A stretch of 64,000 bases of DNA from IMGVR_UViG_3300003322_000571:1-64000; one strand, 5' to 3'; shown: positions 499-64,000, counted from the first letter of the stretch. The notes: generated from the letters alone by a model not told the origin. Program-made: numbers and translations.

Positions 499-743
499 AA
501 GTTGTTGCGTGGGTAGAGACGTTCATCATTTGTTCGACTCAAATATTTCCCGCAATGTACATTTAAGAGACCATCTTGCATGGTGCTGCGATAATCGCCT
601 AAGTGGCTTGGGATGTTGGTTAGTACTCCCTTGAACGACGATCTTGCAGTTAGGACTAATCTGCACGTGTACATTGCGGGAAATCGGGCCTGGTGGCCCA
701 TGGCGGTGTGAAAACCGTAGTTTCTCCGACTTTAACTCAACTT
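499..743 (+). ncRNA. Y RNA-like (YrlA-type) RNA 1: permuted tRNA-like domain with a large insert
   Basis: Shared terminal motif GTTGTTGCGTGG...GTTCATC / TTTAACTCAAC; T-arm ATTTG-TTCGACT-CAAAT, 17-bp stem ATTTCCCGCAATGTACA/TGTACATTGCGGGAAAT, then D-like arm GGGC-CTGGTG-GCCC. Confidence 0.65.
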
Positions 744-747
744 AAAT

Positions 748-856
748 GCGGGCGCTGGTAGCCTCGCTTGGCGACGGCCATAGTAACCAGAAGAGACTCC
801 GGATCTCTATTGTCTGGCGAATGCGAGTATTGGTTCGATTCCAATAAACCTGCACA
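748..856 (+). ncRNA. tRNA-like RNA with an elongated anticodon arm (CCG loop)
   Basis: GCGGG/CCTGC ends, T-arm ATTGG-TTCGATT-CCAAT, distal hairpin AGAGA-CTCCGGA-TCTCT. Confidence 0.55.
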
Positions 857-931
857 GAATTTAGTAAAGCCCTCTGCGAAAGCATTGACACTAAGTTCTG
901 CTACAAGGTTACTTGTAGCAACCAACTGATT

Positions 932-1081
932 ACTGTTGCGAAGTGCAGAATTCCTTCAGAAACTGTCGAGTGTAAACTCTTGGAGGTTCGAATCCTCCCC
1001 AATGGCCATATCGAAAGTGCTGGCAGGTGGCGAAACTGGTAGACGCGAAAGTCCAAAAAGTCTGTACAACTTAATCTCAGT
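932..1081 (+). ncRNA. Y RNA-like RNA 2: circularly permuted tRNA-Leu(CAG)-like domain
   Basis: CTGTTGCGAAG-TGCAGA-ATTCCTTC ... TCTGTAC-AAC-TTAATCTCAG; inside, the variable arm and T-arm come before the D-arm (GGCGAAACTGGTAGACGC). Confidence 0.75.
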
Positions 1082-1089
1082 GTCAAATT

Positions 1090-1174
1090 GGATGACTTAC
1101 TTCCTAGGTGGAAGCACAGCCTCGAAAGCTGATGATCTCGGAAACGGGATGGGGGTCGGTACCTCAGTCATCCG
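1090..1174 (+). tRNA. tRNA-Ser(CGA), non-canonical (probable 8/4 fold)
   Basis: GGATGACT/AGTCATCC acceptor, CAGC-CTCGAAA-GCTG, long variable arm, G73. Confidence 0.75.
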
Positions 1175-1177
1175 CAA

Positions 1178-1320
1178 ATGTGTTGTTGCGTAGTGTAGGA
1201 TTTCTTCATATCCCACGCCGTGTACGTAGGTTCGATTCCTACCTGCCGAGATTCTTGGCAGTCGTCTAGTGGTAGGACAATGGCTTCAAAAAGTGCCTGT
1301 ACGAATTTGACTCAACATAT
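1178..1320 (+). ncRNA. Y RNA-like RNA 3: circularly permuted tRNA domain
   Basis: TGTTGTTGCGTAG-TGTAGG-ATTTCTTC ... CCTGTAC-GAA-TTTGACTCAACA; T-arm GTAGG-TTCGATT-CCTAC, acceptor closed by a loop, then D-arm GTCTAGTGGTAGGAC. Confidence 0.8.
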
Positions 1321-1323
1321 CTT

Positions 1324-1413
1324 GGAACGTAGCGTGCTGAGGATGCACAACGAGCTTTGAACACTCGGGCTGTCGGTGAAGAGCCGGCAATGGTTCGACT
1401 CCATTACGTTCCT
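1324..1413 (+). tRNA. tRNA-Ser(TGA), divergent
   Basis: GGAACGT/ACGTTCC, loop TT-TGA-AC, long variable arm, T-arm. Confidence 0.75.
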
Positions 1414-1427
1414 CTTATAGGTGACAT

Positions 1428-1580
1428 ATGAAATTGATTGAATTGATTGTTACATTGCTTGGTGGACTAATCTCCACAGCACTTTGGATTATCCTTTGGT
1501 TTAACCCGTTGTGGTTCAGAGAGGATTTGCTTAATAAGTACTATCGATCGAACTTTTCATATTTCAACCCGTTCCGATAA
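1428..1580 (+). CDS. small membrane protein (50 aa)
   Basis: AGGTGA RBS; hydrophobic N-terminus MKLIELIVTLLGGLISTALWIILW. Confidence 0.55.
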   Translation: MKLIELIVTLLGGLISTALWIILWFNPLWFREDLLNKYYRSNFSYFNPFR

Positions 1581-1585
1581 TTTTT

Positions 1586-1716
1586 GGTAGATTGGTGTAA
1601 CGGTAGCACGCGTAAACTACCACTAATCGATCTTGTCTCGTCTAGCGACGTTGCGTAGAAAAGTGTTACTTCGCTTTCATTCGCGCGCGGTGGGGGTTCG
1701 AATCCCTCGTCTACCT
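1586..1716 (+). ncRNA. Y RNA-like RNA 4: normally ordered tRNA body with the shared stem in place of the anticodon loop
   Basis: GGTAGAT/GTCTACC acceptor with D- and T-arms; insert TTGTCTCGTC-TAGC-GACGTTGCGTAG...TTACTTC. Confidence 0.7.
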
Positions 1717-1722
1717 CAAATT

Positions 1723-1748
1723 AAAGTCGCTTCGGCGACTTTTCCTTT
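1723..1748 (+). terminator. intrinsic terminator
   Basis: AAAGTCGC-TTCG-GCGACTTTT. Confidence 0.7.
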
Positions 1749-1845
1749 TCCGGGCATGGTGCCCAAACTACAGGAAGACAGATATGGCTGTCGATTGGGA
1801 GTTCGAATCCCCCAATTCCTGCAAACTCAAAACTTACCAATAAAA

Positions 1846-2085
1846 ATGAGTTACAATCTGAAAGAAATGGTCCAAGGTGACCGAAAAGTCCACTTCAACT
1901 TCTACCGTAAGGGCGAACTTTGGTATAAGACAGAGTGTGGATTTGAGTTTCCCGTTCCAGTTGCTGATACAGGTGATGGAACGTTCTTGGCATCCGATCG
2001 AGCGATGCTTTTCATGCGGTACATCCGCAAACAGATTGACTCTATCAAGGAAGGAATGAGCGATGTCTCTTCTGCAACGAATTAA
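1846..2085 (+). CDS. conserved-type hypothetical phage protein
   Basis: ORF MSYNLKEMVQGD...LWYKTECGFEFPVP. Confidence 0.7.
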   Translation: MSYNLKEMVQGDRKVHFNFYRKGELWYKTECGFEFPVPVADTGDGTFLASDRAMLFMRYIRKQIDSIKEGMSDVSSATN

Positions 2086-2506
2086 AGATGACCAACTTGC
2101 TGCTCGTAAAGCACGCGACACGCTGAAAGCGACGTTGCTGACGACGTTGATCGGTGAAGCCACTACTGTCAAGCCTGACGGATCCCGTGGTGGCTCGGAT
2201 GCAGAAGTAACTGCACTGATTAAGAAGTTCATCAAAAACACGAATGAAGTACTGAAGGCGCTAGGTTCGATTGAAGGTGGTGCTGCAATGCAACCGCTTG
2301 CTGAACTGGCAATTCTGGAAACGTACCTTCCGAAGCAACTGTCAGAAGCTGAATTGACCGCAGCAGTTGCCGAAATCGTTGGCCATTTCCGCGAAAAGAC
2401 GAATCCTGTCACGATGGGAATGGTGATGGGTGCACTGAAGGCTGGGTTCGAAGGCCAGTATGACGGTAAGATGGCGAGTGCAGTTGTAAAGGCAGCTGTG
2501 GCGTGA
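2063..2506 (+). CDS. GatB/YqeY domain protein
   Basis: MSLLQRIKDDQLAARKARD; ELAILETYLPKQLSEAEL; MGMVMGALK; DGK motifs. Confidence 0.9.
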   Translation: MSLLQRIKDDQLAARKARDTLKATLLTTLIGEATTVKPDGSRGGSDAEVTALIKKFIKNTNEVLKALGSIEGGAAMQPLAELAILETYLPKQLSEAELTAAVAEIVGHFREKTNPVTMGMVMGALKAGFEGQYDGKMASAVVKAAVA

Positions 2507-2538
2507 CATTTCACGAGACCTAAAGTTGGACAGACCTT

Positions 2539-2916
2539 ATGATTGTTGAACAAATCTTCCTGTTCCTGACGCTGATTACGATTAAGCACTTCATTGCTGA
2601 CTTCCTCTATCAGCCACCGTATCAGTGGATGAACAAAGGTACGTACGGTCACTGGGGTGGAATTGTCCACTCAGGACAACACGCTGTACTGACTGCGATC
2701 ATTCTTGCATTCTTCGTAGATAGTCCTGTTGACATTGGCTTGATTGCACTTCTTGAGTTTGTCATCCACTATCATACTGACTGGGCGAAGATGAACCTGA
2801 ACAAGAAGATGGGATGGGGTGCTACGACGCACAACGAGTTTTGGATCTTGCTTGGTGTTGACCAATTGATTCATTCGTTGACTTATCTTCTGATCGGGTA
2901 TATCGTATTCATGTAA
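2539..2916 (+). CDS. DUF3307-type membrane protein
   Basis: HFIADFLYQ, HYHTD, GVDQLIH motifs. Confidence 0.8.
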   Translation: MIVEQIFLFLTLITIKHFIADFLYQPPYQWMNKGTYGHWGGIVHSGQHAVLTAIILAFFVDSPVDIGLIALLEFVIHYHTDWAKMNLNKKMGWGATTHNEFWILLGVDQLIHSLTYLLIGYIVFM

Positions 2917-2923
2917 ATACAAA

Positions 2924-2997
2924 TGCGGGGTGGTGTAGCCCGGTAGCACACCAGGCTCATAACCTGGAGGTCAGACGTTCAAATCGTCTCCCCGCAT
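2924..2997 (+). tRNA. tRNA-Met(CAT), initiator-like T-loop
   Basis: CCAGG-CTCATAA-CCTGG; TTCAAAT loop. Confidence 0.9.
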
Positions 2998-3286
2998 CAA
3001 AGTGAGCTTTGAAGGTTAGTAACCGAGACACCCTTCTTTATGACACTTAAACTGCTGACAAAGTCGATAAATTCCTTCTCAGGATGTGCAGTTGTCAAGG
3101 TTCACCCCCAAACAGTCTCAGTCCTGCTAATGACTGAGTGGTGGAGGCCGTAACTGTGAAATCAGTTTGCGCCCTACGGTTGCAGAGGACGTCTTTCTCT
3201 GAAAGTCACTGGAAAGAGCTTGCTCGCCGGTTAAAGTGACATACGTCGTGATAACCTATTCGACGAACAATTTAAAGGGGTTTGAT

Positions 3287-3535
3287 ATGTGGAATTTGTA
3301 CTTGTGGATCTGTGGACTGATCGCGTTGTGGGCTTTTGGCTCAGGGATCGTTCAAGACGTCCGTCAAGTATTCCATACGCCAGACCTTGATTTCGATGAG
3401 GACGACGAGACGTACTACAATACGACCGATCCGTTCTTCTGGATGTTTGGTTTTCTGGTCAGTTTCCCCGTCGTAAACTTGATCATCTTGGGATTGATTA
3501 TTTTGTCGGTCGTGTTCAGAAAAGAGACGGTGTAA
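3287..3535 (+). CDS. hypothetical membrane protein
   Basis: Two hydrophobic segments; RBS. Confidence 0.6.
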   Translation: MWNLYLWICGLIALWAFGSGIVQDVRQVFHTPDLDFDEDDETYYNTTDPFFWMFGFLVSFPVVNLIILGLIILSVVFRKETV

Positions 3536-3719
3536 TACAAATGAAAAATCTAGCAGAAATACAACAGATGTTTGAACAACTGGTGCCGTCAGCGCCGTTT
3601 AAACTAGACCTGTCGAAGACAGACGATAAGTATACAGATCCTCAGACACAACGTTGCTTTCAGCAATTTGCTGAAGGTTACTTTGATGGATACGTTGAAG
3701 CTGATCTGGTGTAATGTAA

Positions 3720-3790
3720 GCGGGCATGGTATAGTGGTTGTGCCTCAGCCTTCCAAGCTGATGAGACCGGTTCGATCCCGGTTGCCCGCT
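3720..3790 (+). tRNA. tRNA-Gly(TCC)
   Basis: GCGGGCA/TGCCCGC, TCAGC-CTTCCAA-GCTGA. Confidence 0.95.
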
Positions 3791-3814
3791 CAAATATAAC
3801 ATAAGGTTGCATAT

Positions 3815-4081
3815 ATGATCGGTGACAATTTTGTCCAGCACAAAGATGGTGGTTTGTATTCGATTCTCGCTGTAGGGAAAAGTACTGTTGATCAATCGGA
3901 ACACATCATTTACGTTCACTTGTATCCATTTGAACGTCAAGTGTGGATTCGTCCGATCGAAGAATTCACCGAAGAACGTTTTACGGTTCTAACGCAGGAG
4001 CAAGGCGTTGCGGTGTTGAACCGCGACCGAGAACAGTTCCAAGCAGAAATTACTGCGAACAAGAAAGCTCGTAAGGGCTAA
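3815..4081 (+). CDS. DUF1653-like protein
   Basis: HKDGGLY...IIYVHL...VWIRPIEEF. Confidence 0.65.
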   Translation: MIGDNFVQHKDGGLYSILAVGKSTVDQSEHIIYVHLYPFERQVWIRPIEEFTEERFTVLTQEQGVAVLNRDREQFQAEITANKKARKG

Positions 4082-4093
4082 ATAGGTTTAATT

Positions 4094-4176
4094 GCGGGTA
4101 TAGCTCAGTTGGTAGAGCACCGGTCTTCCAAACCGGAGGCGAATAGTTAACGCAGGTTCGAATCCTGTTGCCCGCT
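4094..4176 (+). tRNA. tRNA-Gly(TCC) with an enlarged variable loop
   Basis: CCGGT-CTTCCAA-ACCGG; variable region of about 15 nt. Confidence 0.85.
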
Positions 4177-4191
4177 CAAATGGAGAAATCC

Positions 4192-4620
4192 ATGATGGAA
4201 TTTGCGCATAACGGTACTGGCATTGTTCGGTACGATCCTCATCGCGGCACGATGAAGTCTAACACGAAGAATTGGTGCGTAATTGACGTTGATCGCGAGA
4301 TCACTCGGTACAACCGGTTCTGGCTTCAACGTGAGAAGCACATCATTCTGCAGCAGCCTGCTTGGGACGCTCACATCTCGGTTGTTCGAGGTGAAAGGCT
4401 TAGCCCCAAAGCACAAAAGCTGTGGAAGAAGTACGAAGGGAAGCGTGTTCCTATTCGGTATGAGCATGGTGATATCCAAATGTCCAAGGACCAAGATCAG
4501 CCTGGTTGGTTCTATTGGATTCGTGTTGACTGCCCGTTCGTGGACGAAATTCGTCAAGAGTTGGGGTTGATCACGAGTTGGAAGTATCATCATATTACGA
4601 TCGGTAGAACTTACTACTGA
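4192..4620 (+). CDS. putative 2H phosphoesterase
   Basis: Two Hx(S/T) motifs: AHISVV and HHITIG. Confidence 0.5.
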   Translation: MMEFAHNGTGIVRYDPHRGTMKSNTKNWCVIDVDREITRYNRFWLQREKHIILQQPAWDAHISVVRGERLSPKAQKLWKKYEGKRVPIRYEHGDIQMSKDQDQPGWFYWIRVDCPFVDEIRQELGLITSWKYHHITIGRTYY

Positions 4621-4631
4621 AGGAGTGGTTC

Positions 4632-4835
4632 ATGAAAGTGGTCACAGATCCTAAAACAGGGAAGCTGCATACTGTTGATAGTCCGTCCGAAGAAAGTATC
4701 AGGCGGAAATTGGCAGAACAGCGTCGTGAACTGCGGGAAATGCTCGCAGGTAACGTTCCTTTTCATGAAGATCAGTGGTCAAAGAAAGAACCACCTGAGT
4801 CTCCTCCCGAAGATCGTTGGGAAGATGACGAATAA
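4632..4835 (+). CDS. hypothetical protein
   Basis: AGGAG RBS; ORF. Confidence 0.6.
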   Translation: MKVVTDPKTGKLHTVDSPSEESIRRKLAEQRRELREMLAGNVPFHEDQWSKKEPPESPPEDRWEDDE

Positions 4836-4836
4836 A

Positions 4837-4938
4837 AGGTCCATGGTGTAACGGCAGCATTCCGGTCTCCTAAGTGCTTGCTCTAATGAGCATTTAGGAA
4901 AACCGTCGGTCGCGGTTCGAATCCGTGTGGACCTGCCA
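4837..4938 (+). tRNA. tRNA-Trp(CCA) with a 28-nt hairpin insertion in the anticodon (4871-4898)
   Basis: AGGTCCA/TGGACCT-G-CCA; removing the insert restores CGGT-CT-CCA-AA-ACCG. Confidence 0.8.
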
Positions 4939-4963
4939 TAACTATAACTATAACAAGGCTCTA

Positions 4964-5206
4964 ATGACAGCTACTGCCAAGAAGATTGTGTTCGCTCCAG
5001 GCGTCCTCGAACAACTCGAATCTGATTTCCAAGGTGAGGAACTCCAACAAGTCCTCGATGAAATTGCACAACTTGCAAATGACCCAACGCAGGGTAAAGC
5101 TGTTAACATGACACAGCTAATGCAAGAAGATCCAGCTTTGTATGCACAGCTGATTACGCAGCTGGAAAGCATTGAAGATAACACTGTAGCACCAACTATT
5201 CAATAA
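4964..5206 (+). CDS. hypothetical protein
   Basis: ORF in operon context. Confidence 0.6.
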   Translation: MTATAKKIVFAPGVLEQLESDFQGEELQQVLDEIAQLANDPTQGKAVNMTQLMQEDPALYAQLITQLESIEDNTVAPTIQ

Positions 5207-5214
5207 GGTGGTAT

Positions 5215-5469
5215 ATGGAAGGCCGTGAACTCGTCAAACTAGCTGCAGACTTTTCTGCAGGTACCGTGACTGCTGCTTATATCAAGCAAACGTTCGGTGA
5301 AGGTGTGTTCTCAACTGTCGCAGCACTAGCAGCTGGTGGAGTTGCCGGCCTTGTTACTGATGCTTTGGTTGAAACTGTGGACCAACACACGGGTGTTGTT
5401 TCTGCAGCGGGTAAAGTAGTAGACTCCGGGATCGGAGCTGTAACTTCTCTGTGGAATGATTGGTTCTGA
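5215..5469 (+). CDS. hypothetical Ala/Gly-rich protein
   Basis: AGGTGG RBS; ORF. Confidence 0.65.
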   Translation: MEGRELVKLAADFSAGTVTAAYIKQTFGEGVFSTVAALAAGGVAGLVTDALVETVDQHTGVVSAAGKVVDSGIGAVTSLWNDWF

Positions 5470-5470
5470 T

Positions 5471-5638
5471 ATGTGGTACGAACAAGAAGATGCAATCTTT
5501 CCACCACGTGTGGCAATTCTACTAGAAGGTAGTATTGTCCAAGTTGGCAATCGTTGTTACGTTAAAAACGATCGTTGGTCAAACGCCCGTGCGGTAACAA
5601 ATTCGCTTGAACAAGCGTTTTTGATTGCTGGATTTTAA
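5471..5638 (+). CDS. hypothetical protein
   Basis: Abuts the upstream gene. Confidence 0.5.
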   Translation: MWYEQEDAIFPPRVAILLEGSIVQVGNRCYVKNDRWSNARAVTNSLEQAFLIAGF

Positions 5639-5658
5639 TTAGACTAAATAGAAAGTAT

Positions 5659-5733
5659 GCCTCGTTAGCTCAGCGGTAGAGCGGCGTCTTTACACGGCGC
5701 GGGTCGGCGGTTCGAACCCGTCACGAGGTACCA
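5659..5733 (+). tRNA. tRNA-Val(TAC)
   Basis: Canonical cloverleaf; encoded CCA. Confidence 0.95.
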
Positions 5734-5740
5734 TATTCAC

Positions 5741-6268
5741 ATGCAACATAACATTGACACGATTGCGTACGACGCAATCAAGAAGATTGGCGAAGAGGAC
5801 CTTCGCATCATTTCTGGTCAAGACCAAACCAGTAATCGTGTCTGGTTTGACATTGCTGTGACGCGCTGGATCCGCAACGAATACGGTCTGTGGCATGATA
5901 GTCCTCTGACTGCTGTTTGGCGCGATAATCCAGACACCCGACGCATTATCGATGGTGTGGATCATAGTTACTGGCATCCAGACGCAGTATCCAACCGCAT
6001 CTACAAGTTCATGCAACAATACTTGAGCTACTACCCTGGACGTAAAGTTCATGTGTATACGTACGGAGTATTTGGACGTCAAGTTGAAGGCGAATACGAA
6101 GTCGTCAAGCGTACAAAGAGTGGTTTGATTGAAGTTTGTCACCCCGTGTACAAGAAAGTACGGCAAACAGTTCACCCTGATCGTATTGCTTTTGTTGATC
6201 AGCCTGTTGAACAACAATACAATAGCAACATTGAAATCATTACTCATGTATGGAAGTATCCTGAGTAA
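5741..6268 (+). CDS. hypothetical protein (N-terminus DUF6794-like)
   Basis: WIRNEYGLW...HPDAVS motif. Confidence 0.65.
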   Translation: MQHNIDTIAYDAIKKIGEEDLRIISGQDQTSNRVWFDIAVTRWIRNEYGLWHDSPLTAVWRDNPDTRRIIDGVDHSYWHPDAVSNRIYKFMQQYLSYYPGRKVHVYTYGVFGRQVEGEYEVVKRTKSGLIEVCHPVYKKVRQTVHPDRIAFVDQPVEQQYNSNIEIITHVWKYPE

Positions 6269-6276
6269 GTGAGTTT

Positions 6277-6366
6277 GGAAGCGTGGTAGAGCGGTTTATT
6301 GCAGAAGTCTTGAAAACTTCCGGTCCTTAACCGGGCCCGTGGGTTCGAATCCCACCGCTTCCTCCA
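6277..6366 (+). tRNA. tRNA-Ser(TGA)
   Basis: GAAGT-CTTGAAA-ACTTC, long variable arm, CCA. Confidence 0.95.
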
Positions 6367-6383
6367 AATACAAACGAGAATAT

Positions 6384-6590: not shown

Positions 6591-6601
6591 CTACAACGAA
6601 T

Positions 6602-6805: not shown

Positions 6806-6811
6806 CACCCT

Positions 6812-6896: not shown

Positions 6897-7014
6897 CATA
6901 TGATTCAATTTGAAAGTCCACTTCCATATCCAGTAATTTGGACACCGGAAGATGAAGCGCGACTCGACGCAGCGATCGCCATGATCCGTGAAAAGCGTCA
7001 ACAGAAAGCCCAAC

Positions 7015-35290: not shown

Positions 35291-35369
35291 TTGCGGCTGC
35301 GTAGCAACACGGTTACTTCTTTGACTCTTAATCAAAACCATAACACCGTTAGCGATTTTATCTCCGCAA
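35291..35369 (+). ncRNA. Y RNA-like RNA 5: minimal, displaying a tRNA-Lys(CTT) anticodon arm
   Basis: GCGGCTGCGTAG...GGTTACTTC-[TTTGA-CTCTTAA-TCAAA]...TTTATCTCCGC. Confidence 0.72.
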
Positions 35370-37613: not shown

Positions 37614-37684
37614 GGGATGCAAACTTTAAGGTGAAGTACCTGGCTTTTAACCAGGAAAACAGGGGTCAGTACCCTGGCGTCCTA
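37614..37684 (+). tRNA. tRNA-Lys(TTT), atypical T-loop
   Basis: CCTGG-CTTTTAA-CCAGG. Confidence 0.8.
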
Positions 37685-57962: not shown

Positions 57963-58275
57963 GTTCTGGGGCATTACATGCTTCGTGTTTGTCGCTCTGT
58001 TTACTTTCAGAGCGTACAAACTTGAACCAGGCAAAGGACAATCACCGCGTAGCTCGATCATTGAAGCTTGGGTCAACATCGTCATTGGTTTCACTATCAG
58101 TTACGGTGCGAACTTCCTAATTTTCCCTCTAATTGGCTCGCATCTAACCGCTGGACAGAACTTTTGGATTGGCTGGATTTACACAGCAATTTCAATTGTT
58201 CGTCAGTATACAATTAGGCGTTGGTTCAACGACCACGTCCACAATATGGCACTGCGCTTGGCAGGAGACAAATGA
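57949..58275 (+). CDS. membrane protein
   Basis: QSPRSSIIEAWVN...SIVRQYTIRRWFN. Confidence 0.7.
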   Translation: MWSLEFWGITCFVFVALFTFRAYKLEPGKGQSPRSSIIEAWVNIVIGFTISYGANFLIFPLIGSHLTAGQNFWIGWIYTAISIVRQYTIRRWFNDHVHNMALRLAGDK

Positions 58276-58823
58276 TTTACTTGTTTTTAGATACGGAGTT
58301 CACCTCGTTTGAACAACCAGAGCTGATCTCCATTGGCATCGTTTCGGAAGACGGTCAACATGAATTCTACCGTGAAGTGTCCGACCACAATGCGTATAAA
58401 CGTAGCCAGTTCGTCAAGGACGTCGTCATCCCGTTGTTGTTCAACGACTACGCAACAAGCATGATTCGTGAGTACGTTGCTATGGATCTCAACAAGTGGA
58501 TCGATAGCCTCCCAACCGATCAAGTGACAATTGTTGTTGATTATCCTGGTGACTGGCATCTCGTTAAGCCATTGCTTGATAAGGTGTCTGAGCGACGCGT
58601 TAAGATCAATGCTGAGATGCGTAATCACTCGTTCCTTGCTGCTGCACGGTACCGAGCTGTTGATGTCTCGCCTGAAAAGACATTGGAAGCAATGTTCGTG
58701 ATGGAGGAGTCTGAAGAGGCTTACTTCAAGACAGATCCTCGTCAACATCACGCTTTGGTCGATGCACGAGCAATGCGTGCTGGATGGATTGCAGCTTTGG
58801 AGGTTCTCAATGGACAGCAATAA
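58272..58823 (+). CDS. DEDDh 3'-5' exonuclease
   Basis: FLDTEF, LISIGIV, HHALVDA. Confidence 0.88.
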   Translation: MIYLFLDTEFTSFEQPELISIGIVSEDGQHEFYREVSDHNAYKRSQFVKDVVIPLLFNDYATSMIREYVAMDLNKWIDSLPTDQVTIVVDYPGDWHLVKPLLDKVSERRVKINAEMRNHSFLAAARYRAVDVSPEKTLEAMFVMEESEEAYFKTDPRQHHALVDARAMRAGWIAALEVLNGQQ

Positions 58824-59766
58824 ACTACTAGGAGGCTTTTATGGCCTCGTTCTTGGTGATGCTGTTGGTGTTCCGTTTGAATTTCAACAGCCGCGCCAAC
58901 TACCGCCGCTGTCAAAAATCGACATTGTGATGGCTGATGTTCCCAAGTTCACCAAAACATATCCGCAAGTCCCGTACGGTACCTGGTCCGATGACACAGC
59001 ATTGTCATTGTGTCTTCTTGATGCGTTGCTTGATTTTACCGAGCCGGAGATGTGGCACGGCGACTTTGTCGAGAATATGCAAAATTGGCGATTCCATGGC
59101 AAATTTACTCCGTATAACGAGAAGAAATTTGACATTGGGTTGCAGACTGCCATGGCATTGACTGAACTGGAAGACGGATTGAGTATTCAGGCGCGTGTGG
59201 ACGGCCCAGATCGTTGTGGAAACGGTGCTTTGATGCGTAGCCTTCCAGTTGCCCTCGTGTATGCTTACGTACCAGACCACGACGTTCGTGCAAACTTAAT
59301 TGCCAATGTTACACTCGATCACGTCAATGCTACCCACGCGAACATGATGAGCAAGATTGTCAGTTTGGCGTATACGTTGCTGGCATCATATCTTCTCGAT
59401 GGAGTGTATTGGTTCGATGCCATTGATCTGGCGCTTGATAAGACCGAACAACTTCTTGGTGAAGCTTATAAGGATGACATGTTGAAGTTCCGAGCTTATG
59501 AGCATCGTGAACCAACAGGAACAGGCTACTCTGTTGATACATTCTGGTCTGCGATTTATGCATTGAAGGCTGGTTCAGACTTCCGTACAACGATTCAGCA
59601 TGCTATTTCACTTGGCAACGATACAGACACAACTGCATGCGTTGCTGGTGGACTCGCGGGGATTATCTACGGGTTTGATCGTCTTCCTGTTGATTGGCTT
59701 GCACATCTTCGCGATAAGCAACAAATTGATCAATATGCTCAGCGACTACTAATTATCTCACTATGA
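58810..59766 (+). CDS. ADP-ribosylglycohydrolase
   Basis: GDAVGVPFEF, WSDDT, GNGALMR, GNDTDT. Confidence 0.93.
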   Translation: MDSNKLLGGFYGLVLGDAVGVPFEFQQPRQLPPLSKIDIVMADVPKFTKTYPQVPYGTWSDDTALSLCLLDALLDFTEPEMWHGDFVENMQNWRFHGKFTPYNEKKFDIGLQTAMALTELEDGLSIQARVDGPDRCGNGALMRSLPVALVYAYVPDHDVRANLIANVTLDHVNATHANMMSKIVSLAYTLLASYLLDGVYWFDAIDLALDKTEQLLGEAYKDDMLKFRAYEHREPTGTGYSVDTFWSAIYALKAGSDFRTTIQHAISLGNDTDTTACVAGGLAGIIYGFDRLPVDWLAHLRDKQQIDQYAQRLLIISL

Positions 59767-59957
59767 AAGACAAAATAGGTCAGAAACTAGCTGTACATGA
59801 CCGCGTAGCGACGACGTTGTATGGTGCTTTGTGCGTTGGAGTTATTACAAAGTTGACAAAGGCGTATGTCTACGTACTAGCCCTTGACGAGACGGCGATG
59901 TTAGCGACCTTTAAGACGACTTCCAGCAACGTGATTAAGATTGGAAACACAGAATGA
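59763..59957 (+). CDS. hypothetical protein
   Basis: Coupled ORF. Confidence 0.55.
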   Translation: MKDKIGQKLAVHDRVATTLYGALCVGVITKLTKAYVYVLALDETAMLATFKTTSSNVIKIGNTE

Positions 59958-60382
59958 TTCTAAAAGAAAAGACACTAATGAGGGTAGATGCCCCTAATCG
60001 TAATATGCGTCAATATCCACGCGAGGTCGTTGAAGCTGCTCTTGCAACGAAAACGACGATGTACGGATTGCTAGGCGAACCGGCAATTGTTGGTGATGAC
60101 GAGGGAACGTTTAAAATTGATGTCCCAACTGCCGAGAACGCTGCTTTTGTTGCTTCCAACTTCAAGTTTGATGGTGACTACGTTGTCTGCGATGTTGAAA
60201 CACTTGATACTCATACAGGACGAATTTTCGAGCAATTGACAACTTTGCCTAAAGGTTGTGGATTCTATCCAGTTCTGACCGTCGGTGGCTATATTGGATC
60301 AACGATGAGTGATGGTGTTCAATTAGTCACGGAGTGGGATTTTATCGTTCCGTACGCAACTGTTATTCCTATGTGGGATTAA
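59954..60382 (+). CDS. degenerate prohead protease (T4 gp21-like) paralog
   Basis: PNRNMRQYPREV, LLGE, LDT.TGR; catalytic His not evident. Confidence 0.55.
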   Translation: MILKEKTLMRVDAPNRNMRQYPREVVEAALATKTTMYGLLGEPAIVGDDEGTFKIDVPTAENAAFVASNFKFDGDYVVCDVETLDTHTGRIFEQLTTLPKGCGFYPVLTVGGYIGSTMSDGVQLVTEWDFIVPYATVIPMWD

Positions 60383-60383
60383 A

Positions 60384-60425
60384 ATGAGTCATCCTAAACA
60401 AGTTATTGTGATGCGCAAAGCATAA
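60384..60425 (+). pseudogene. orphaned original N-terminus of Pth2 (MSHPKQVIVMRKA*)
   Basis: Duplicates PKQVIVMR of ORF 61142. Confidence 0.85.
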
Positions 60426-60449
60426 ATACCTTCCAAAGAAGGTATTTGA

Positions 60450-61172
60450 ATGTACATCATCTACAAACACACTTGTACTGCCACTGGTAAAAGTTATGTT
60501 GGACAAACCAAAGAACTAACTAAGCGTACAAACGCACACAAGAGTTCAAGGTCGGGGTGCGTTGCGTTCAGGAACGCCATTAGCTGCTACGGGTGGGAGT
60601 CATTTGTCACGGTTGAGTTGGCTTGTTGCACGACGGTTGGAGACGCCAACGTTGTAGAGAGCTTGTTGATATCCGAATACAACACCATAGCACCCAGTGG
60701 ATATAACTTAACAAGTGGTGGCAAAGCATGTCAGATCAGCGAATTGACCAAGCGGAAAATTTCTGAGTCACTGAAAGGTAGGCCGAAGCCTCCCCGGACA
60801 TCATCTCACATAGAAAATCTGGCTGCACGGCGTCGAGGAAAGTCGTATGAGGAGTTATACGGCGTTGAACGAGCCAAAGAGTTAAAGAAAAACAAAGGGC
60901 ACGCGTTTGATGAGTACCATTCACAGCGACGAGGAAAAGGGTTTAACGACTTGTTTGGTGAAGACAAAGCCGCAGAGATACGCGCAAAGATGTCGAGGAC
61001 TAGGTTGACCAAAATTCCCGAATCAACCCAAGTGTTGATAGAAACAACATACGATCGTGACAAGTGTGTGACAAAAACGTTTGCGGAATCAATCGGGTTG
61101 ACAGTATACATTGTAGTTAGATATTTGAAGGACATCGGTAAATGGAATCCAAAGCAGCTCCCAAGCAGGTAA
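60450..61172 (+). CDS. GIY-YIG homing endonuclease
   Basis: IIY..T...GKSYVGQT, GYNLTSGG, NUMOD3-like repeat. Confidence 0.9.
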   Translation: MYIIYKHTCTATGKSYVGQTKELTKRTNAHKSSRSGCVAFRNAISCYGWESFVTVELACCTTVGDANVVESLLISEYNTIAPSGYNLTSGGKACQISELTKRKISESLKGRPKPPRTSSHIENLAARRRGKSYEELYGVERAKELKKNKGHAFDEYHSQRRGKGFNDLFGEDKAAEIRAKMSRTRLTKIPESTQVLIETTYDRDKCVTKTFAESIGLTVYIVVRYLKDIGKWNPKQLPSR

Positions 61173-61558
61173 TCGTAATGAGACGCGATCTGAAGATGCC
61201 GCGAGGAAAGATTGCGGCACAGGCAGCACATGCTTCAATGGCAGGCCTTCTCAACCATGTTACCTTCCGTCTTGAGGAAGACACGATGGAGGGATGGGCG
61301 TTGTCGATGCCGAAGAATGGTGCGATGTCACAGTGGTTGCGTGGCGCTTTCACCAAGGTTTGCGTTTGCGTTGAGAGTGAAGCTGAACTTGAGGCTGTGT
61401 ACAAGCAAGCTCAATTGGCTGGCCTCAACGTGTCAAAGATTGTCGATAACGGTTTGACTGTATTCGACAACGTTCCCACTTGGACGTGCATCGGTGTGGG
61501 GCCGGACTTCCCTGAGCGAATTGATCCAATCACTGGCCATTTGAAACTATACAATTGA
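61142..61558 (+). CDS. pth2: peptidyl-tRNA hydrolase Pth2
   Basis: KQVIVMRRDLKM..GKIAAQAAHA, IVDNGLT, IGVGP, ITGHLKLY. Confidence 0.93.
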   Translation: MESKAAPKQVIVMRRDLKMPRGKIAAQAAHASMAGLLNHVTFRLEEDTMEGWALSMPKNGAMSQWLRGAFTKVCVCVESEAELEAVYKQAQLAGLNVSKIVDNGLTVFDNVPTWTCIGVGPDFPERIDPITGHLKLYN

Positions 61559-62183
61559 CATAATACCAGTCTGTAACAGTTGGACTGTTGAGTTTAGCCA
61601 TTATTGACGAACGATGCATGTTGAGCGTACGAATAGCATCTCCTATTGAGTTGTACTTAACGCCAGCACATACCACTGGTTTTAATCGAGCTTGATTAGA
61701 AGAACGAAGTTTCACCTTTTGCTCTTCTGTCATTGGCACTCCTTTGTTGGATGCTGTTCTTCCGGTAAGCTTTTCGCGTTGTTCCAATGTCCATGGCTTT
61801 CCTTTGTTGGGCGCAGGTCGTCCCTTCAAAGATTCGGAGATCATCCGCTTGGAAAGTTCCGTGTGTGTTTTTCCGATGAATGTGCCGGATGTATTTCCGT
61901 TAGGATTTCCCTTTCCACCAACAGTTATATTCAAGCATAGTGGATCTCGTAACAACTCAGTGGTAACCAGTTCACTCTCAATCACCAACGCTTCTGCGCG
62001 TGTAGAGCAGATGCGAAGAACTTCACGCTTGAACAGCGATCGTCCGTATTTCCTGACGCTAGCTCTGATACGATTACCCGAACCTAAATAGTCATCTGTG
62101 CTCGCATTCTCCCCTGAATGTACGCCAATGTAAAATTGGTTTGTGTCAATGTTGACGGTCTTGTAAACAATGTGCTCTCTCAT
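61530..62183 (-). CDS. GIY-YIG (Seg-like) homing endonuclease
   Basis: IVYKTVN...FYIGVH, YLGSG, NUMOD3/NUMOD1 repeats. Confidence 0.9.
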   Translation of the reverse strand: MREHIVYKTVNIDTNQFYIGVHSGENASTDDYLGSGNRIRASVRKYGRSLFKREVLRICSTRAEALVIESELVTTELLRDPLCLNITVGGKGNPNGNTSGTFIGKTHTELSKRMISESLKGRPAPNKGKPWTLEQREKLTGRTASNKGVPMTEEQKVKLRSSNQARLKPVVCAGVKYNSIGDAIRTLNMHRSSIMAKLNSPTVTDWYYVNCIVSNGQ

Positions 62184-62206
62184 GATACCCCTCCAACGCT
62201 TATTTA

Positions 62207-62284
62207 TGGACTTGCATTGCGATTGGTCCAGACTTCCCTGAGAAGATCGATCCGATCACTCGTCAACTCAAGTTGTACAACTAA
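62207..62284 (+). pseudogene. orphaned original C-terminus of Pth2
   Basis: WTCIAIGPDFPEKIDPITRQLKLYN* versus WTCIGVGPDFPERIDPITGHLKLYN*. Confidence 0.9.
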
Positions 62285-62292
62285 GTACACCT

Positions 62293-62390
62293 GCCAGCGT
62301 TTCTAATATTGGCCTTAGGGGTGCCCTTATAAAGCACTAAGACCCGTCTAGATCAGGCGGTTAATGTGGGTTCGATTCCCATCGCTGGTA
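62293..62390 (+). tRNA. tRNA-Ile(TAT)-like with a long variable arm
   Basis: GCCAGCG/CGCTGGT; loop CT-TAT-AA; extra arm of about 28 nt. Confidence 0.7.
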
Positions 62391-62446
62391 CACACAACCC
62401 TAATATTTCTGTTGGGGTAACGTACTCAACCATATATACTTTCTTC

Positions 62447-62513
62447 AGCTGTTGCGTAGTTCAAGGGTTACTTCTTTTGGTGAAACTATCCCCTTGACGT
62501 TTTAATCTCAGCT
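62447..62513 (+). ncRNA. Y RNA-like RNA 6: minimal
   Basis: AGCTGTTGCGTAG-TTCAAGGG-TTACTTC...CCCTTGAC-GTT-TTAATCTCAGCT; TATACT -10 box just upstream. Confidence 0.75.
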
Positions 62514-62526
62514 TTAACATATGTAC

Positions 62527-62588
62527 GCACGTGGGTGCAAGGTTAACTGTTCCCGTCTCATGACCGGACGTTAGTCTCCACGCTGCCA
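62527..62588 (+). ncRNA. CCA-ended hairpin displaying a Met(CAT)-like anticodon loop
   Basis: Paired ends GCA-CGTGG/CCACG-C-TGC-CA; apical loop CTCATGA. Confidence 0.4.
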
Positions 62589-62600
62589 ACTTTTGGTTGA

Positions 62601-62635
62601 AGCCCTGGTATGCAACACTGCTACCAGGGCTTTTC
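62601..62635 (+). terminator. intrinsic terminator
   Basis: AGCCCTGGTA...TACCAGGGCTTTT. Confidence 0.7.
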
Positions 62636-62652
62636 CTTTTTGGAGAAAATAA

Positions 62653-63057
62653 ATGTCGCTAGGTACAATTAAAGATGTCGTAATTGCTACGGTGGATGTC
62701 GCTAATCTCAACAATCGCGTTTACCCAAAGAACGTGATTGAAGAAGCTGTTCGTCAGCGTGTTCATCCGATTTTCGGCCGAGTCGGTATGCCGGAAGCAG
62801 GATCGTCTTGTGAGGTCGACCTTCGTGATGTATCACATCAAGTTACCGATCTCCGAATCACCGAAGATGGTAACTTGACTGGCACAGTTGTCGTCCTTGA
62901 CACGCCTCCCGGTAGGTTGCTGACATCATTGTTGACAGAGAACCTCGACATCACCTTCCGCATGGCAGGATATGGTGATCTAATTGATAAGGATGGATAC
63001 ACAGAAGTGACCAACTTTCGTCTATCATCGATCAATGCTGTCGCAGACGGTGCTTGA
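62653..63057 (+). CDS. degenerate prohead protease (gp21-like) paralog
   Basis: NLNNRVYP, VSHQVT, VLDTPPGR. Confidence 0.65.
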   Translation: MSLGTIKDVVIATVDVANLNNRVYPKNVIEEAVRQRVHPIFGRVGMPEAGSSCEVDLRDVSHQVTDLRITEDGNLTGTVVVLDTPPGRLLTSLLTENLDITFRMAGYGDLIDKDGYTEVTNFRLSSINAVADGA

Positions 63058-63075
63058 TCTCATTAAGGGTCAACC

Positions 63076-63375
63076 ATGAAACTCCTCGAAGAACTTGAAG
63101 CACAGTTTACTGATGGTCGTCAACTGTCTTCTGAACTGTTTGGTTACATCTTGCGTTGGTATCAAACAGGTGAGATCGACAAAGTTGATGAGCTGCTGAA
63201 GTCGATCGAGTTCAAGCCCACGATGCTGCATGTTGCTGCTGGCGTGATCCGTATCACAGCAGGCTGGCGACACCTTCTTCCGTCTTGGGAAGAAGCAAAG
63301 GATCGGGCGGTGTTGGCGATCACGGAAAGTGGTCATGATCCTCACAAGCTGTTAATGGGAGTTCGTCCGTTATGA
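63076..63375 (+). CDS. hypothetical protein
   Basis: ORF. Confidence 0.6.
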   Translation: MKLLEELEAQFTDGRQLSSELFGYILRWYQTGEIDKVDELLKSIEFKPTMLHVAAGVIRITAGWRHLLPSWEEAKDRAVLAITESGHDPHKLLMGVRPL

Positions 63376-63560
63376 AACGTGACATCAAAGATCATCCGTT
63401 ATTGAAAACGATGACGGCTGAGCAACTGTTGCAAATGCTCGTTGATGTTCGAGAAGTTGCATGGGTCGAAGGCCAAGATGGACGAACGAAAGAAGATTTT
63501 TACAACGCTTTAACGCAAATTTGTCGCATCACACGTGATGTTGACAACTACCATTTTTAA
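63372..63560 (+). CDS. hypothetical protein
   Basis: Coupled ORF. Confidence 0.55.
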   Translation: MKRDIKDHPLLKTMTAEQLLQMLVDVREVAWVEGQDGRTKEDFYNALTQICRITRDVDNYHF

Positions 63561-63573
63561 CTGGAGAAACGAT

Positions 63574-64000
63574 ATGTCAAAACTCAATCCAACTGGTCGT
63601 AACGTTACGACAAACATTGTTGCGGTTGCTGCGAACCGTGGTGAACAGCTTGCTGTTTCTGCGAATGGCAACTTGCAATTCAAGAAGGACTCCTACCAGA
63701 CGTTGTACGAAACAACTGTTTCGACGATGCTTGGCAAGGGCAACCAACTGAATTCTGCTGATGCGCTTGTGCAAAAGCTGAAGGCGTCCGTTCGTTCTGT
63801 TGTTGCTGATGGCGCCAGCTCATTCGACTTCATTGCGAACCTCGCAATCCACGCACGTACGGAGATGAACGTCCGTACGATCCCAATCGTTCTTGTGGTT
63901 GAATTTGCGAAGGCGCTCGCCGATCAGCGTCAACCGTTGGTTGCACGTGTTGATGCGATTGAACAAGAACTGACTACAGCTCGTAAGGCTAAGCGTGCGA
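63574..64000 (+). CDS. Ro60/Rsr-like TROVE-domain protein (N-terminal part; runs off the window)
   Basis: GGAG RBS; open to the window end; DFIANLAIHARTEMNVRTIPIVLVVE resembles the TROVE F.A.LA.YAR..M.LR..P helix. Confidence 0.72.
   Translation, partial: MSKLNPTGRNVTTNIVAVAANRGEQLAVSANGNLQFKKDSYQTLYETTVSTMLGKGNQLNSADALVQKLKASVRSVVADGASSFDFIANLAIHARTEMNVRTIPIVLVVEFAKALADQRQPLVARVDAIEQELTTARKAKRA

What the first reader, a model, noticed from the sequence alone, without database searches (positions are those of the whole stretch)
499..64000. Phage-encoded modular Ro60-Y RNA repertoire: six RNAs share one stem but carry different tRNA-derived cargo, and a TROVE gene is present
Seen: six intergenic elements (499-743, 932-1081, 1178-1320, 1586-1716, 35291-35369, 62447-62513) share the same architecture. 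A closing helix is followed by G-(T/C)TGCG-(A/T)(A/G)G, a 6-8-bp helix whose sequence differs but whose pairing is kept (TGCAGA/TCTGTA, TGTAGG/CCTGTA, TCAAGGG/CCCTTGA), then TT-N-C(T/A)TC; the opposite strand reads TT-N(3)-CT-C. What lies between the strands differs in every copy. An ORF missing from the ORF track starts at 63574, 1 kb after copy 6, and looks like a TROVE N-terminus. Established: bacterial Ro60 (Rsr) binds the bulged terminal stem of Y RNAs, YrlA RNAs carry a tRNA-mimic domain, and rsr-yrl loci are linked to RNA repair. Inference: this phage uses a single Ro60 with interchangeable RNA adaptors or decoys. I am not aware of a description of such an expanded set with this range of cargo.
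Basis: partly seen in the sequence, partly recalled or inferred. Interest (0 to 1): 0.95.

Follow-up and report, generated by a model that had tools for sequence, protein, structure and literature searches.

The report
Phage Ro60 gene with Y-like RNAs
An uncultivated 350-kb phage carries a Ro60 (TROVE) gene and six small RNA genes sharing the Ro60-linked "Y RNA-like" module already known from bacteria and phages, so the finding is real but belongs to a known kind, with one unusual tRNA-shaped variant.

Summary
Five elements (498-744, 931-1082, 1178-1320, 35291-35369, 62447-62513) share one architecture: a closing helix, YUGCG(U/A)RG, a covarying second helix, a UUNCUUC junction, then a CG..UU..CU motif on the return strand. 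The sixth (1586-1716) holds the same parts in circularly permuted order inside a tRNA-shaped RNA.

The ORF at 63574 runs off the window. On the parent contig it is a 558-aa TROVE + vWA protein, a Ro60.

A covariance model of the module gave 105 hits in about 80 Ro60-encoding phage loci. All were on the Ro60 strand, most just upstream of the gene, with compensatory changes at all 13 pairs. These are therefore Y RNA-like (Yrl) genes.

The novelty claim fails. Phage YrlA RNAs were reported in 2014 and phiLo Yrl1/2 in 2025. Caulobacter phage CcrColossus carries eight tandem copies, more than this window.

Three things may be new:
- The genes are scattered in tRNA arrays up to 63 kb from Ro60.
- They directly abut tRNA genes.
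- One variant has normal tRNA topology, and it recurs in six other phage loci.

Binding, expression and function are untested.

The parts
498..744 (+). E1: long (247 nt) Y-like RNA. P1 498-504/738-744. 5' motif UUGCGUGG 505-512. Second helix about 513-520/720-727 with one bulged U. Junction GUUCAUC 521-527. T-arm-like hairpin 528-544 with loop UUCGACU. 16-bp hairpin 546-561/669-684 enclosing about 107 nt. Return motif CGACUUUAACU 727-737. It starts 1 nt after tRNA-Pro (426-497).
   Evidence: Composite scans (P1 7 bp, second helix 6 bp; shuffles 0.047 per window). Fold z = -4.0. Not recovered full-length by models R1 or R2, because the insert is too long.
931..1082 (+). E2: YrlA-type RNA. 5' motif UUGCGAAG 936-943. 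Anticodon-stem-like helix UGCAGA 944-949 / UCUGUA 1061-1066. T arm 982-998. Degenerate closed acceptor hairpin. D arm 1030-1046, closest to the phage tRNA-Leu D arm. Return motif 1067-1077.
   Evidence: R2 gives 19.3 bits, E 0.007, full length. R2 was built without this copy. Also.
1178..1320 (+). E3: YrlA-type RNA. P1 1178-1185/1313-1320. 5' motif UUGCGUAG 1186-1193. Helix UGUAGG 1194-1199 / CCUGUA 1296-1301. T arm 1226-1242. 7-bp closed acceptor hairpin 1243-1249/1255-1261. D arm 1264-1278. Return motif 1302-1312. It ends 3 nt before tRNA-Ser (1324-1414).
   Evidence: R2 gives 26.8 bits, E 5e-5, full length. Also.
1586..1716 (+). E4: tRNA-topology Y-like RNA. Acceptor stem 1586-1592/1709-1715. 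D arm 1595-1598/1606-1609. Anticodon-stem equivalent 1621-1628/1658-1665. Return motif 1628-1639. Capped P1 hairpin CGUC-UAGC-GACG 1639-1650. 5' motif UUGCGUAG 1651-1658. Junction UUACUUC. T arm 1692-1708. No anticodon loop.
   Evidence: Homologues with the same layout occur in six other loci, and alignment A7 is 96.4% paired. ARAGORN and Rfam tRNA do not call it.
1723..1751 (+). Intrinsic terminator directly after E4.
35291..35369 (+). E5: short Y-like RNA. P1 35291-35296/35364-35369. Motif CUGCGUAG 35297-35304. Junction UUACUUC. Small hairpin UUGA-CUCUUAA-UCAA. No T or D arm.
   Evidence: R1 58.1 bits and R2 47.1 bits. This copy was part of the seed alignments.
62447..62513 (+). E6: short Y-like RNA 1.06 kb upstream of Ro60. 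P1 62447-62451/62509-62513. Motif 62452-62459. Helix 62461-62467/62491-62497. Pyrimidine-rich loop. Return motif 62498-62508.
   Evidence: R1 64.7 bits and R2 55 bits. This copy was part of the seed alignments. The closest relative, L120, has a module about 600 nt upstream of its Ro60.
62601..62642 (+). Terminator-like hairpin (10-bp stem, 11-nt loop, T-rich tail) downstream of E6.
   Evidence: Read directly. The scan missed it because its loop limit is 8 nt.
63574..64000 (+). First 142 codons of the Ro60 (TROVE + vWA) gene. The ORF continues to contig position 65250 (558 aa).
61142..61558 (+). PTH2 peptidyl-tRNA hydrolase gene. It is part of the gene neighbourhood conserved around Ro60 in related jumbo phages.

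Best explanation
The window is the first 64 kb of a 350-kb uncultivated T4-like jumbo phage. This phage encodes a Ro60 orthologue and at least six Y RNA-like (Yrl) genes.

Each RNA carries the same Ro60-linked module. A helix (P1) is followed by an asymmetric internal loop, with a conserved 5' strand (Y)UGCG(U/A)RG and a return strand CG-N-UU-NNN-CU. A second helix follows, equivalent to a tRNA anticodon stem, and then a conserved UUNCUUC junction in the position of the variable loop. The 5' strand corresponds to the GNCGAA(N)G motif of bacterial YrlA and to the GGUCCGA contacted by Xenopus Ro60.

The distal part differs between copies:
- E2 and E3 carry a circularly permuted tRNA-like domain (YrlA type).
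- E1 carries a T-arm-like hairpin plus a long extra arm.
- E5 and E6 carry only a small hairpin or a pyrimidine-rich loop (YrlB-like).
- E4 has normal tRNA topology, with the module capped by a loop where the anticodon loop would be.

Inferred mechanism, not shown:
- The genes lie inside tRNA arrays and abut tRNA genes. They are therefore probably made from the same precursors and released by tRNA-processing enzymes such as RNase P.
- Ro60 binds the module.
- The variable domain tethers or gates Ro60 towards partners such as host PNPase or tRNA-recognising enzymes. This would serve RNA quality control or repair during infection, alongside the neighbouring RNA ligase, PTH2 and exoribonuclease genes.
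For: Ro60 gene:
- TROVE 7e-21 plus VWA_2 on the full ORF.
- Best solved relative is Thermus phage phiLo Ro60, 9L5Y/9KOP, E 3.7e-14.
- 2247 homologues, many on contigs of 320-340 kb.
- An invariant DxSGSM (MIDAS-like) stretch in the alignment.

Module linked to Ro60:
- Model R1, built from 12 short copies, found 105 matches at E <= 0.01 in 1.0 Mb of Ro60-encoding viral loci. All were on the Ro60 strand, none on the other, and most lay within about 700 nt upstream of the gene.
- A strict regex gave 58 hits on + against 10 on -.
- A blind pattern scan of viral contigs returned loci that turned out to encode Ro60 beside the modules.
- In 862 kb of loci holding the bare pattern, R2 hit only five loci, all with real copies.

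Structure:
- 92.4% of cells are paired, against 57% after shuffling and 42-50% after sliding.
- All 13 pairs show compensatory changes.

Window copies: R2 scores are E6 55, E5 47, E3 26.8 and E2 19.3 bits, each at the correct full length. E1 is supported by the composite scans.

Link to known YrlA: Rfam YrlA (RF02553) hits the region upstream of CcrColossus Ro60. That region holds eight copies of the same GGCGUAG-helix-UACUUC module.

E4 type: seven members from six contigs, 96.4% paired, with all 7 acceptor pairs covarying. Two of them lie directly upstream of a Ro60 gene in L114.

tRNA-array embedding also occurs in L022, L102, L123 and L087.
Against: - There are no expression or binding data of any kind.
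- Rfam YrlA gives no hit in the window even at E <= 10.
- The 5' motif differs from the published GNCGAAN0-1G, mostly UGCGUAG.
- Five of the six copies are 28-63 kb from Ro60, whereas published YrlAs lie within 4 kb.
- E1 is not recovered by any covariance model.
- E4's proposed fold is 5 kcal/mol above its unconstrained minimum.
- Single-sequence folds of E2, E5 and E4 are no better than shuffles.
- Alignments A5 and A7 were fitted to the model structure, which inflates pairing counts.
- E5 and E6 were in the seed alignments, so their scores are not independent.
Confidence: 0.85

Rival explanations
1. The elements are structured RNAs or decayed tRNA genes of the phage tRNA arrays. Their conserved motif would serve tRNA-precursor processing or some other Ro60-independent role, and the link to Ro60 would be incidental.
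For: Five of the six copies sit in tRNA clusters far from Ro60. The same embedding is seen in L022, L102, L087 and L123. Other degenerate tRNA-like RNAs without the motif lie nearby.
Against: The same module is found immediately upstream of Ro60 on the same strand in more than 50 independent phage loci, many of them without tRNA arrays. No hits occur on the opposite strand or in 95 control loci. The 345-kb contig with array-embedded copies (L087) also encodes Ro60 (L134).
Confidence: 0.06
2. Only some of the six are functional Y-like RNAs. E1 (very long insert, G instead of A in the motif) and/or E4 (permuted) would be degenerate or non-binding relics, so the working repertoire is smaller, about four.
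For: E1 is not detected by R1 or R2. E4 scores only 14.7 bits with R2 and with wrong pairing. E2's acceptor-like hairpin is degenerate.
Against: E1 keeps a 7-bp P1, a 6-bp second helix and both loop motifs, against 0.047 expected by chance. The E4 layout recurs with covariation in six other loci, two of them in the YrlA position directly upstream of Ro60.
Confidence: 0.25
3. The elements are cis-acting leaders, attenuators or terminators that control neighbouring genes, including Ro60, rather than stand-alone RNAs.
For: E6 lies upstream of Ro60 on the same strand and is followed by a terminator-like hairpin. E5 sits in a 106-nt gap between two ORFs.
Against: Tandem arrays of up to eight copies occur. 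Copies are flanked on both sides by tRNA genes. tRNA-like domains are present. Homologous YrlA RNAs are known to be stable Ro60-bound RNAs (PMC4201824).
Confidence: 0.03

Closest known systems
YrlA RNAs of bacteria and phages (Rfam RF02553; Chen et al. 2014, PMC4201824; structure in bioRxiv 10.1101/312249)
   Same: A Ro60-binding stem with a conserved purine-rich 5' strand is followed by a tRNA-like domain in permuted order: anticodon-stem equivalent, variable region, T arm, closed acceptor hairpin, D arm. They are encoded on the Ro60 strand. E3 even has the 7-bp acceptor hairpin that makes M. smegmatis YrlA an RNase P substrate.
   Different: The motif is UGCG(U/A)RG rather than GNCGAAN0-1G. 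There is no Rfam hit. The copies lie 62-63 kb from Ro60 inside a tRNA array instead of within 4 kb.
Y RNA-like arrays of Caulobacter phage CcrColossus and other Ro60-encoding phages
   Same: The module is identical in architecture (GGCGUAG, helix, UACUUC, then GUUCCCC plus a closing helix). Several paralogues carry different distal domains.
   Different: In CcrColossus the eight copies are tandem and directly upstream of Ro60. Here they are dispersed over 62 kb. The two Ro60 proteins are only about 28% identical.
Thermus phage phiLo Ro60 with Yrl1 and Yrl2 (PMC12135203)
   Same: A phage Ro60 with more than one short stem-bulge-stem RNA encoded upstream. The protein is the closest solved structure.
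   Different: The phiLo Yrls were defined by a CGAA motif and have no reported tRNA-like domain. Binding and PNPase recruitment were shown there and not here.
YrlB / Yrn2-type short Y RNAs
   Same: [quoted passage not shown]
   Different: No sequence model exists to test membership. E5 and E6 share the junction UUACUUC with the YrlA-type copies.
Canonical tRNAs and circularly permuted tRNA genes
   Same: E4 has a 7-bp acceptor stem, D arm and T arm in the normal tRNA order. E2 and E3 have the permuted order.
   Different: E4 has no anticodon loop. That arm is extended into the Ro60-type bulged helix. E4 is not called by ARAGORN or by the Rfam tRNA model.

Membership tests
Ro60 / Rsr (TROVE family) | TROVE (HEAT-repeat ring) domain | tested here: met
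   PF05731 at E 7.1e-21, 75.3 bits against a cut-off of 23, on the full ORF L001:10001-11674. The in-window fragment alone gives no hit.
Ro60 / Rsr (TROVE family) | C-terminal von Willebrand factor A domain with a MIDAS motif | tested here: met
   PF13519 VWA_2 at 28.3 bits against a cut-off of 27. D379, S381, G382, S383 and M384 are invariant in 12 homologues.
Ro60 / Rsr (TROVE family) | Similarity to a solved Ro60 | tested here: met
   phmmer hit to 9L5Y/9KOP (phiLo Ro60), E 3.7e-14, residues 172-534.
Ro60 / Rsr (TROVE family) | Closed ring fold and binding of Y RNA | not tested
   No structure prediction was run. Binding needs biochemistry.
YrlA (Rfam RF02553) | Score at or above the family gathering threshold (69 bits) | tested here: not met
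   No YrlA match in window 1-2000 even at E <= 10 or at gathering in the whole window. The accepted phage examples in CcrColossus also reach only 42, 30 and 30 bits.
YrlA (Rfam RF02553) | 5' motif GNCGAAN0-1G | tested here: inconclusive
   E2 reads UGCGAAG and matches NCGAAG. E3, E4, E5 and E6 read UGCGUAG, and E1 reads UGCGUGG. The variant GCGUAG is the rule in phage copies next to Ro60.
YrlA (Rfam RF02553) | T arm, closed acceptor-like hairpin and D arm in that order between the two strands of the stem | tested here: met
   Met for E2 and E3 by direct reading. E1 has only a T-arm-like hairpin. E5 and E6 lack them. E4 has them in normal tRNA order.
YrlA (Rfam RF02553) | Encoded within about 4 kb of Ro60 on the same strand | tested here: not met
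   Only E6 meets it, at 1.06 kb. E1-E4 lie 62-63 kb away and E5 28 kb away. All are on the Ro60 strand.
YrlA (Rfam RF02553) | Bound by Ro60; modified by TruB and DusA | not testable with these tools
   Needs RIP, EMSA or modification mapping.
   E6 55 bits, E5 47.1, E3 26.8 (E 5e-5) and E2 19.3 (E 0.007). E1 is not matched. E4 scores 14.7 bits, E 0.13, with this linear model. E5 and E6 were in the seed.
   E4 plus L102, L114 (two copies), L150, L188 and L179. 96.4% of cells are paired and 13 of 21 pairs show compensatory change. E4 was in the seed. L150, L188 and L179 were not.
Canonical tRNA | Cloverleaf with a 7-nt anticodon loop recognised by tRNA finders | tested here: not met
   None of E1-E6 is called by ARAGORN or by Rfam tRNA at gathering.

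The most novel reading that the evidence does not exclude
Ro60-encoding phages carry two circularly permuted forms of the same tRNA-like Y RNA. Besides the known YrlA form, whose ends lie in the Ro60-binding stem, there is a genomically encoded form with normal tRNA topology (E4, and six more in other phage loci). It has a 7-bp acceptor stem, and the anticodon loop is replaced by a capped Ro60-binding module.

Embedded in tRNA arrays, such RNAs would be matured by RNase P and 3'-end enzymes and could receive CCA. They would then present Ro60 with a true tRNA end. This may be the ancestral state of YrlA, or a bait that couples Ro60 to tRNA-directed host factors.
Probability: 0.4. Interest if true: 0.65.

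Novelty: new variant of a known kind. Interest (0 to 1): 0.45.

Why it matters
Ro60 and Y RNA particles are conserved from bacteria to humans, where Ro60 is a lupus and Sjogren autoantigen. What the variable half of a Y RNA recruits is still largely unknown.

Phages with five to eight differently equipped Y-like RNAs for one Ro60 offer a natural series for asking what each distal module does.

The tRNA-topology form bears on the proposed origin of YrlA from tRNA genes.

The covariance models made here also recover phage Yrl genes that the Rfam YrlA model misses. That would improve annotation of jumbo-phage RNA-repair islands.

Tried and rejected
- Rfam at gathering and at E <= 10 found only tRNAs and noise in the window.
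- Pfam on the in-window ORF fragment found nothing. A first attempt used a wrong frame.
- blastn of both regions against 50,697 phage records gave no match. There is no cultured close relative, and the best Ro60 identity in isolates is below 32%.
Only about eight of 118 loci held real copies.
- MAFFT could not align the 3' ends when loop lengths differed. Trimming to 5-bp closing helices gave a usable seed.
- R1 cannot span long inserts and produced wrong truncated alignments for E1-E3. R2 fixed E2 and E3 but not E1.
- I first judged E4 incomplete, with no return motif and no closing helix. I rejected that view after finding the permuted order.
- R3 below about 50 bits matches plain tRNAs and the junctions of tandem YrlA arrays. 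It cannot be used alone to count tRNA-topology copies.
- Neighbours of the YqeY-like gene at 2063-2506 in three related contigs have no modules.
- Single-sequence fold z-scores are uninformative for E2, E4 and E5.
- The supplementary tables of Chen et al. 2014 and the 2020 Annual Review are not held. I could not check how many copies per phage were already listed.

Full report
WHAT THE WINDOW IS. The window equals positions 1-64000 of IMG/VR contig IMGVR_UViG_3300003322_000571, which is 350,089 bp. It carries 30 ARAGORN tRNA genes in clusters at 0.4-10.4 kb and 32.8-47 kb, all on the + strand. No cultured phage is similar at the DNA level. A Gp23-type capsid gene lies just past the window, so this is an uncultivated T4-like jumbo phage.

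THE ORF AT 63574. The ATG is at 63574 and the frame is open to the window end. The 142 in-window residues give no Pfam hit. On the parent contig the ORF is 558 aa (L001:10001-11674). It matches TROVE (7e-21) and VWA_2, and its closest solved structure is Thermus phage phiLo Ro60 (9L5Y/9KOP, 3.7e-14). It has 2247 homologues, with the top ones (45-73% identity) on contigs up to 341 kb. A DxSGSM stretch is invariant.

The gene neighbourhood runs in this order:
- Rv2179c-like exoribonuclease
- ADP-ribosylglycohydrolase
- PTH2
- Ro60
- a Gp23-like paralogue
- a CYTH protein
- an ATP-dependent RNA ligase
- TelA and TerF

PTH2 upstream and the ligase downstream of Ro60 are kept in all three related jumbo-phage contigs that I fetched, and most of the remaining genes in two of them.

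THE SIX ELEMENTS. The 8-nt motif alone occurs at chance frequency. The composite does not: five elements (E1, E2, E3, E5, E6) have the following layout.
- A closing helix P1 of 5-8 bp.
- YUGCG(U/A)RG.
- A second helix of 6-7 bp.
- A junction UUNCUUC (GUUCAUC in E1).
- Variable contents.
- The return strand of the second helix.
- CG-N-UU-NNN-CU.
- The return strand of P1.

Shuffled windows give 0.61 loose hits and 0.047 strict hits. P1 and the second helix differ in sequence in every copy but keep pairing.

WHAT THEY ARE. Rfam finds nothing in the window. As a positive control I fetched the Ro60 locus of Caulobacter phage CcrColossus, a phage with published Y-like RNAs (PMC12135203, citing Chen et al. 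2014). Rfam YrlA hits it below threshold, at 42, 30 and 30 bits. The sequence there shows tandem units reading GGCGUAG, helix, (U)UACUUC, then GUUCCCC and a closing helix. This is the same architecture as in the window.

I then collected 78 Ro60-encoding viral loci and built a covariance model from 12 short copies.
- It gave 105 matches at E <= 0.01 in 1.0 Mb.
- Every match was on the Ro60 strand.
- Most lay within about 700 nt upstream of the gene.
- The matches fell in about 51 of 77 loci, and also in the closest relative L120, about 600 nt upstream of its Ro60.

On the resulting alignment 92.4% of cells pair, against 57% after shuffling and 42-50% after sliding. All 13 pairs show compensatory changes. 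The caveat is that this alignment is fitted to the model.

A second model built from that alignment finds E6 (55 bits), E5 (47), E3 (26.8, E 5e-5) and E2 (19.3, E 0.007) at the correct full lengths, and nothing else in the 64 kb. In 862 kb of viral loci that merely contain the primary-sequence pattern, it hits only five loci, all with genuine copies. Going the other way, the blind pattern search had pulled in loci where Ro60 sits next to the copies: L071, L079, L096, L100 and L114.

The elements are therefore members of the Ro60-linked Y RNA-like family.

ANATOMY OF THE COPIES. In YrlA terms (PMC4201824; bioRxiv 10.1101/312249) the second helix is the anticodon-stem equivalent. The UUACUUC junction lies in the variable-loop position and includes the conserved UA.
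- E3 is a textbook YrlA. It has a T arm (GUAGG-UUCGAUU-CCUAC), a 7-bp acceptor hairpin closed by a loop, and a D arm (GUCU-AGUGGUA-GGAC).
- E2 has the same order, with a decayed acceptor hairpin and a D arm closest to the phage's tRNA-Leu.
- E1 (247 nt) has a T-arm-like hairpin, a 16-bp arm enclosing about 107 nt, and two small hairpins. No model spans it, so it rests on the composite scan.
- E5 has only a 4-bp hairpin with a 7-nt loop.
- E6 has only a pyrimidine-rich loop. Both resemble the short YrlB/Yrn2 class.

E4 IS A PERMUTED FORM. I first thought E4 lacked the return motif. In fact the order is: acceptor stem, D arm, return strand of the anticodon-stem equivalent, return motif CGAUCUUGUCUC, a 4-bp P1 capped by UAGC, UUGCGUAG, the forward strand, UUACUUC, T arm, acceptor stem. 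This is the YrlA fold with its ends moved to the acceptor stem, which is normal tRNA topology.

The same layout occurs in six other places:
- L102
- L114, twice, where the two units sit directly upstream of Ro60 between two short copies
- L150
- L188
- L179

Across the seven members, 96.4% of cells pair and all seven acceptor pairs covary. The YrlA literature describes the family as circularly permuted tRNAs with a closed acceptor loop, and speculates about processing towards a tRNA-like form. I found no description of a genomically non-permuted form, but my literature access is partial.

GENOMIC SETTING. E1 begins 1 nt after tRNA-Pro, E3 ends 3 nt before tRNA-Ser, and E4 is followed by a terminator. 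The same tight embedding between tRNA genes is seen in L022, L102, L123 and L087. L087 lies on the same 345-kb contig as the Ro60 locus L134, about 90 kb away. Dispersal away from Ro60 is therefore not unique to this phage. Release by tRNA-processing enzymes is the obvious inference but is not shown.

NOVELTY. Phage Ro60 and Y-like RNAs are published: 22 phages in 2014, and phiLo with binding and PNPase recruitment in 2025. TROVE in jumbo phages was noted in PMC7824862. Multiplicity is not new in sequence terms. CcrColossus has eight tandem copies, L071 and L087 have four each, and L114 has four. What may be new is the systematic placement in tRNA arrays, the GCGUAG...UACUUC consensus that Rfam misses, and the tRNA-topology variant.

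MECHANISM. Shown by computation: a conserved, covarying, Ro60-linked RNA module with variable distal domains, and a Ro60 gene. Inferred from the family:
- Ro60 binds the bulged stem through its 5' strand.
- The distal domain tethers or gates Ro60 towards partners such as PNPase in the RYPER complex, or tRNA-recognising enzymes.
- This serves RNA surveillance or repair next to the ligase, PTH2 and exoribonuclease genes.

Decoy roles against host tRNA-directed defences are possible but have no specific support.

Noticed in passing
window 1-39: The contig starts inside the 3' end of a tRNA- or tmRNA-like gene (T arm plus acceptor strand). Rfam tmRNA gives 11.3 bits, E 0.067, and R3 also matches it.
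   Followed up: no
window 749-853: An odd tRNA-like gene between E1 and E2. It has an anticodon arm AGAGA-CUCCGGA-UCUCU (CCG), a good T arm, a large insertion in the D-arm region, only a 5-bp acceptor, and GGCGAAUG (the canonical GNCGAA-N-G motif) in the variable region. Rfam tRNA-Sec gives 18.5 bits. ARAGORN does not call it.
   Followed up: partly
window 1090-1177: A structured element of about 88 nt between E2 and E3. It has an 8-bp terminal stem GGAUGACU/AGUCAUCC followed by UACUUCC, and no GCGUAG motif. Its identity is unknown.
   Followed up: no
window 1754-1826: A mini tRNA-like RNA after the E4 terminator: acceptor-like stem CAGGAA/UUCCUG, one hairpin, and a canonical T arm (UGGGAGUUCGAAUCCCCCA). 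It has no D arm.
   Followed up: no
window 62293-62390; also 4837-4935 and 37615-37683: tRNA-like genes found by Rfam (32.4, 41.4 and 29.7 bits) but not by ARAGORN, with long insertions. The first lies 57 nt upstream of E6.
   Followed up: no
window 62514-62600: 87 nt of unassigned sequence between E6 and the terminator-like hairpin at 62601-62642. It contains small hairpins and a GUUCCCG stretch, and may belong to the same transcript.
   Followed up: no
window 58221-62183 and L001 11684-18314: A gene island around Ro60: Rv2179c-like 3'-5' exoribonuclease, ADP-ribosylglycohydrolase, PTH2, Ro60, a Gp23-like capsid paralogue, CYTH, an RNA ligase (PHA02142 OB plus RNA_ligase), TelA and TerF-vWA. 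PTH2 and the ligase flank Ro60 in all of L120, L121 and L123; the rest is only partly shared, and L123 lacks the Gp23-like, TelA and TerF genes. An RF-1/ArfB-like gene is present in L120 and L121.
   Followed up: partly
window 60450-61172 (+) and 61530-62183 (-): Two GIY-YIG/SegE-type homing-endonuclease genes flank the PTH2 gene just upstream of the E6-Ro60 region.
   Followed up: no
L125 2568-3759 (Caulobacter phage CcrColossus, NC_019406.1): Eight tandem Y-like modules upstream of Ro60 (gp139). The record annotates one stretch as tRNA-Gln and others as terminators.
   Followed up: partly
L128 2229-2701: Tandem YrlA-type units with very long P1 helices (18-24 bp). The 3' strand of one P1 overlaps the 5' strand of the next, so the pairings are mutually exclusive or a processing site is shared.
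   Followed up: no
L022 1325-1399 and 6082-6154: ARAGORN calls two tRNAs with anticodon CUA (amber-reading, labelled Pyl) in a dense phage tRNA array that also holds a Y-like module. This may indicate stop-codon recoding in that phage.
   Followed up: no
L102 and L127: A contig with array-embedded modules (L102, 150 kb) and a Ro60-bearing contig (L127, 80 kb, Ro60 52% identical to the window's) come from the same metagenome, 3300036715. They could be pieces of one jumbo-phage genome.
   Followed up: no
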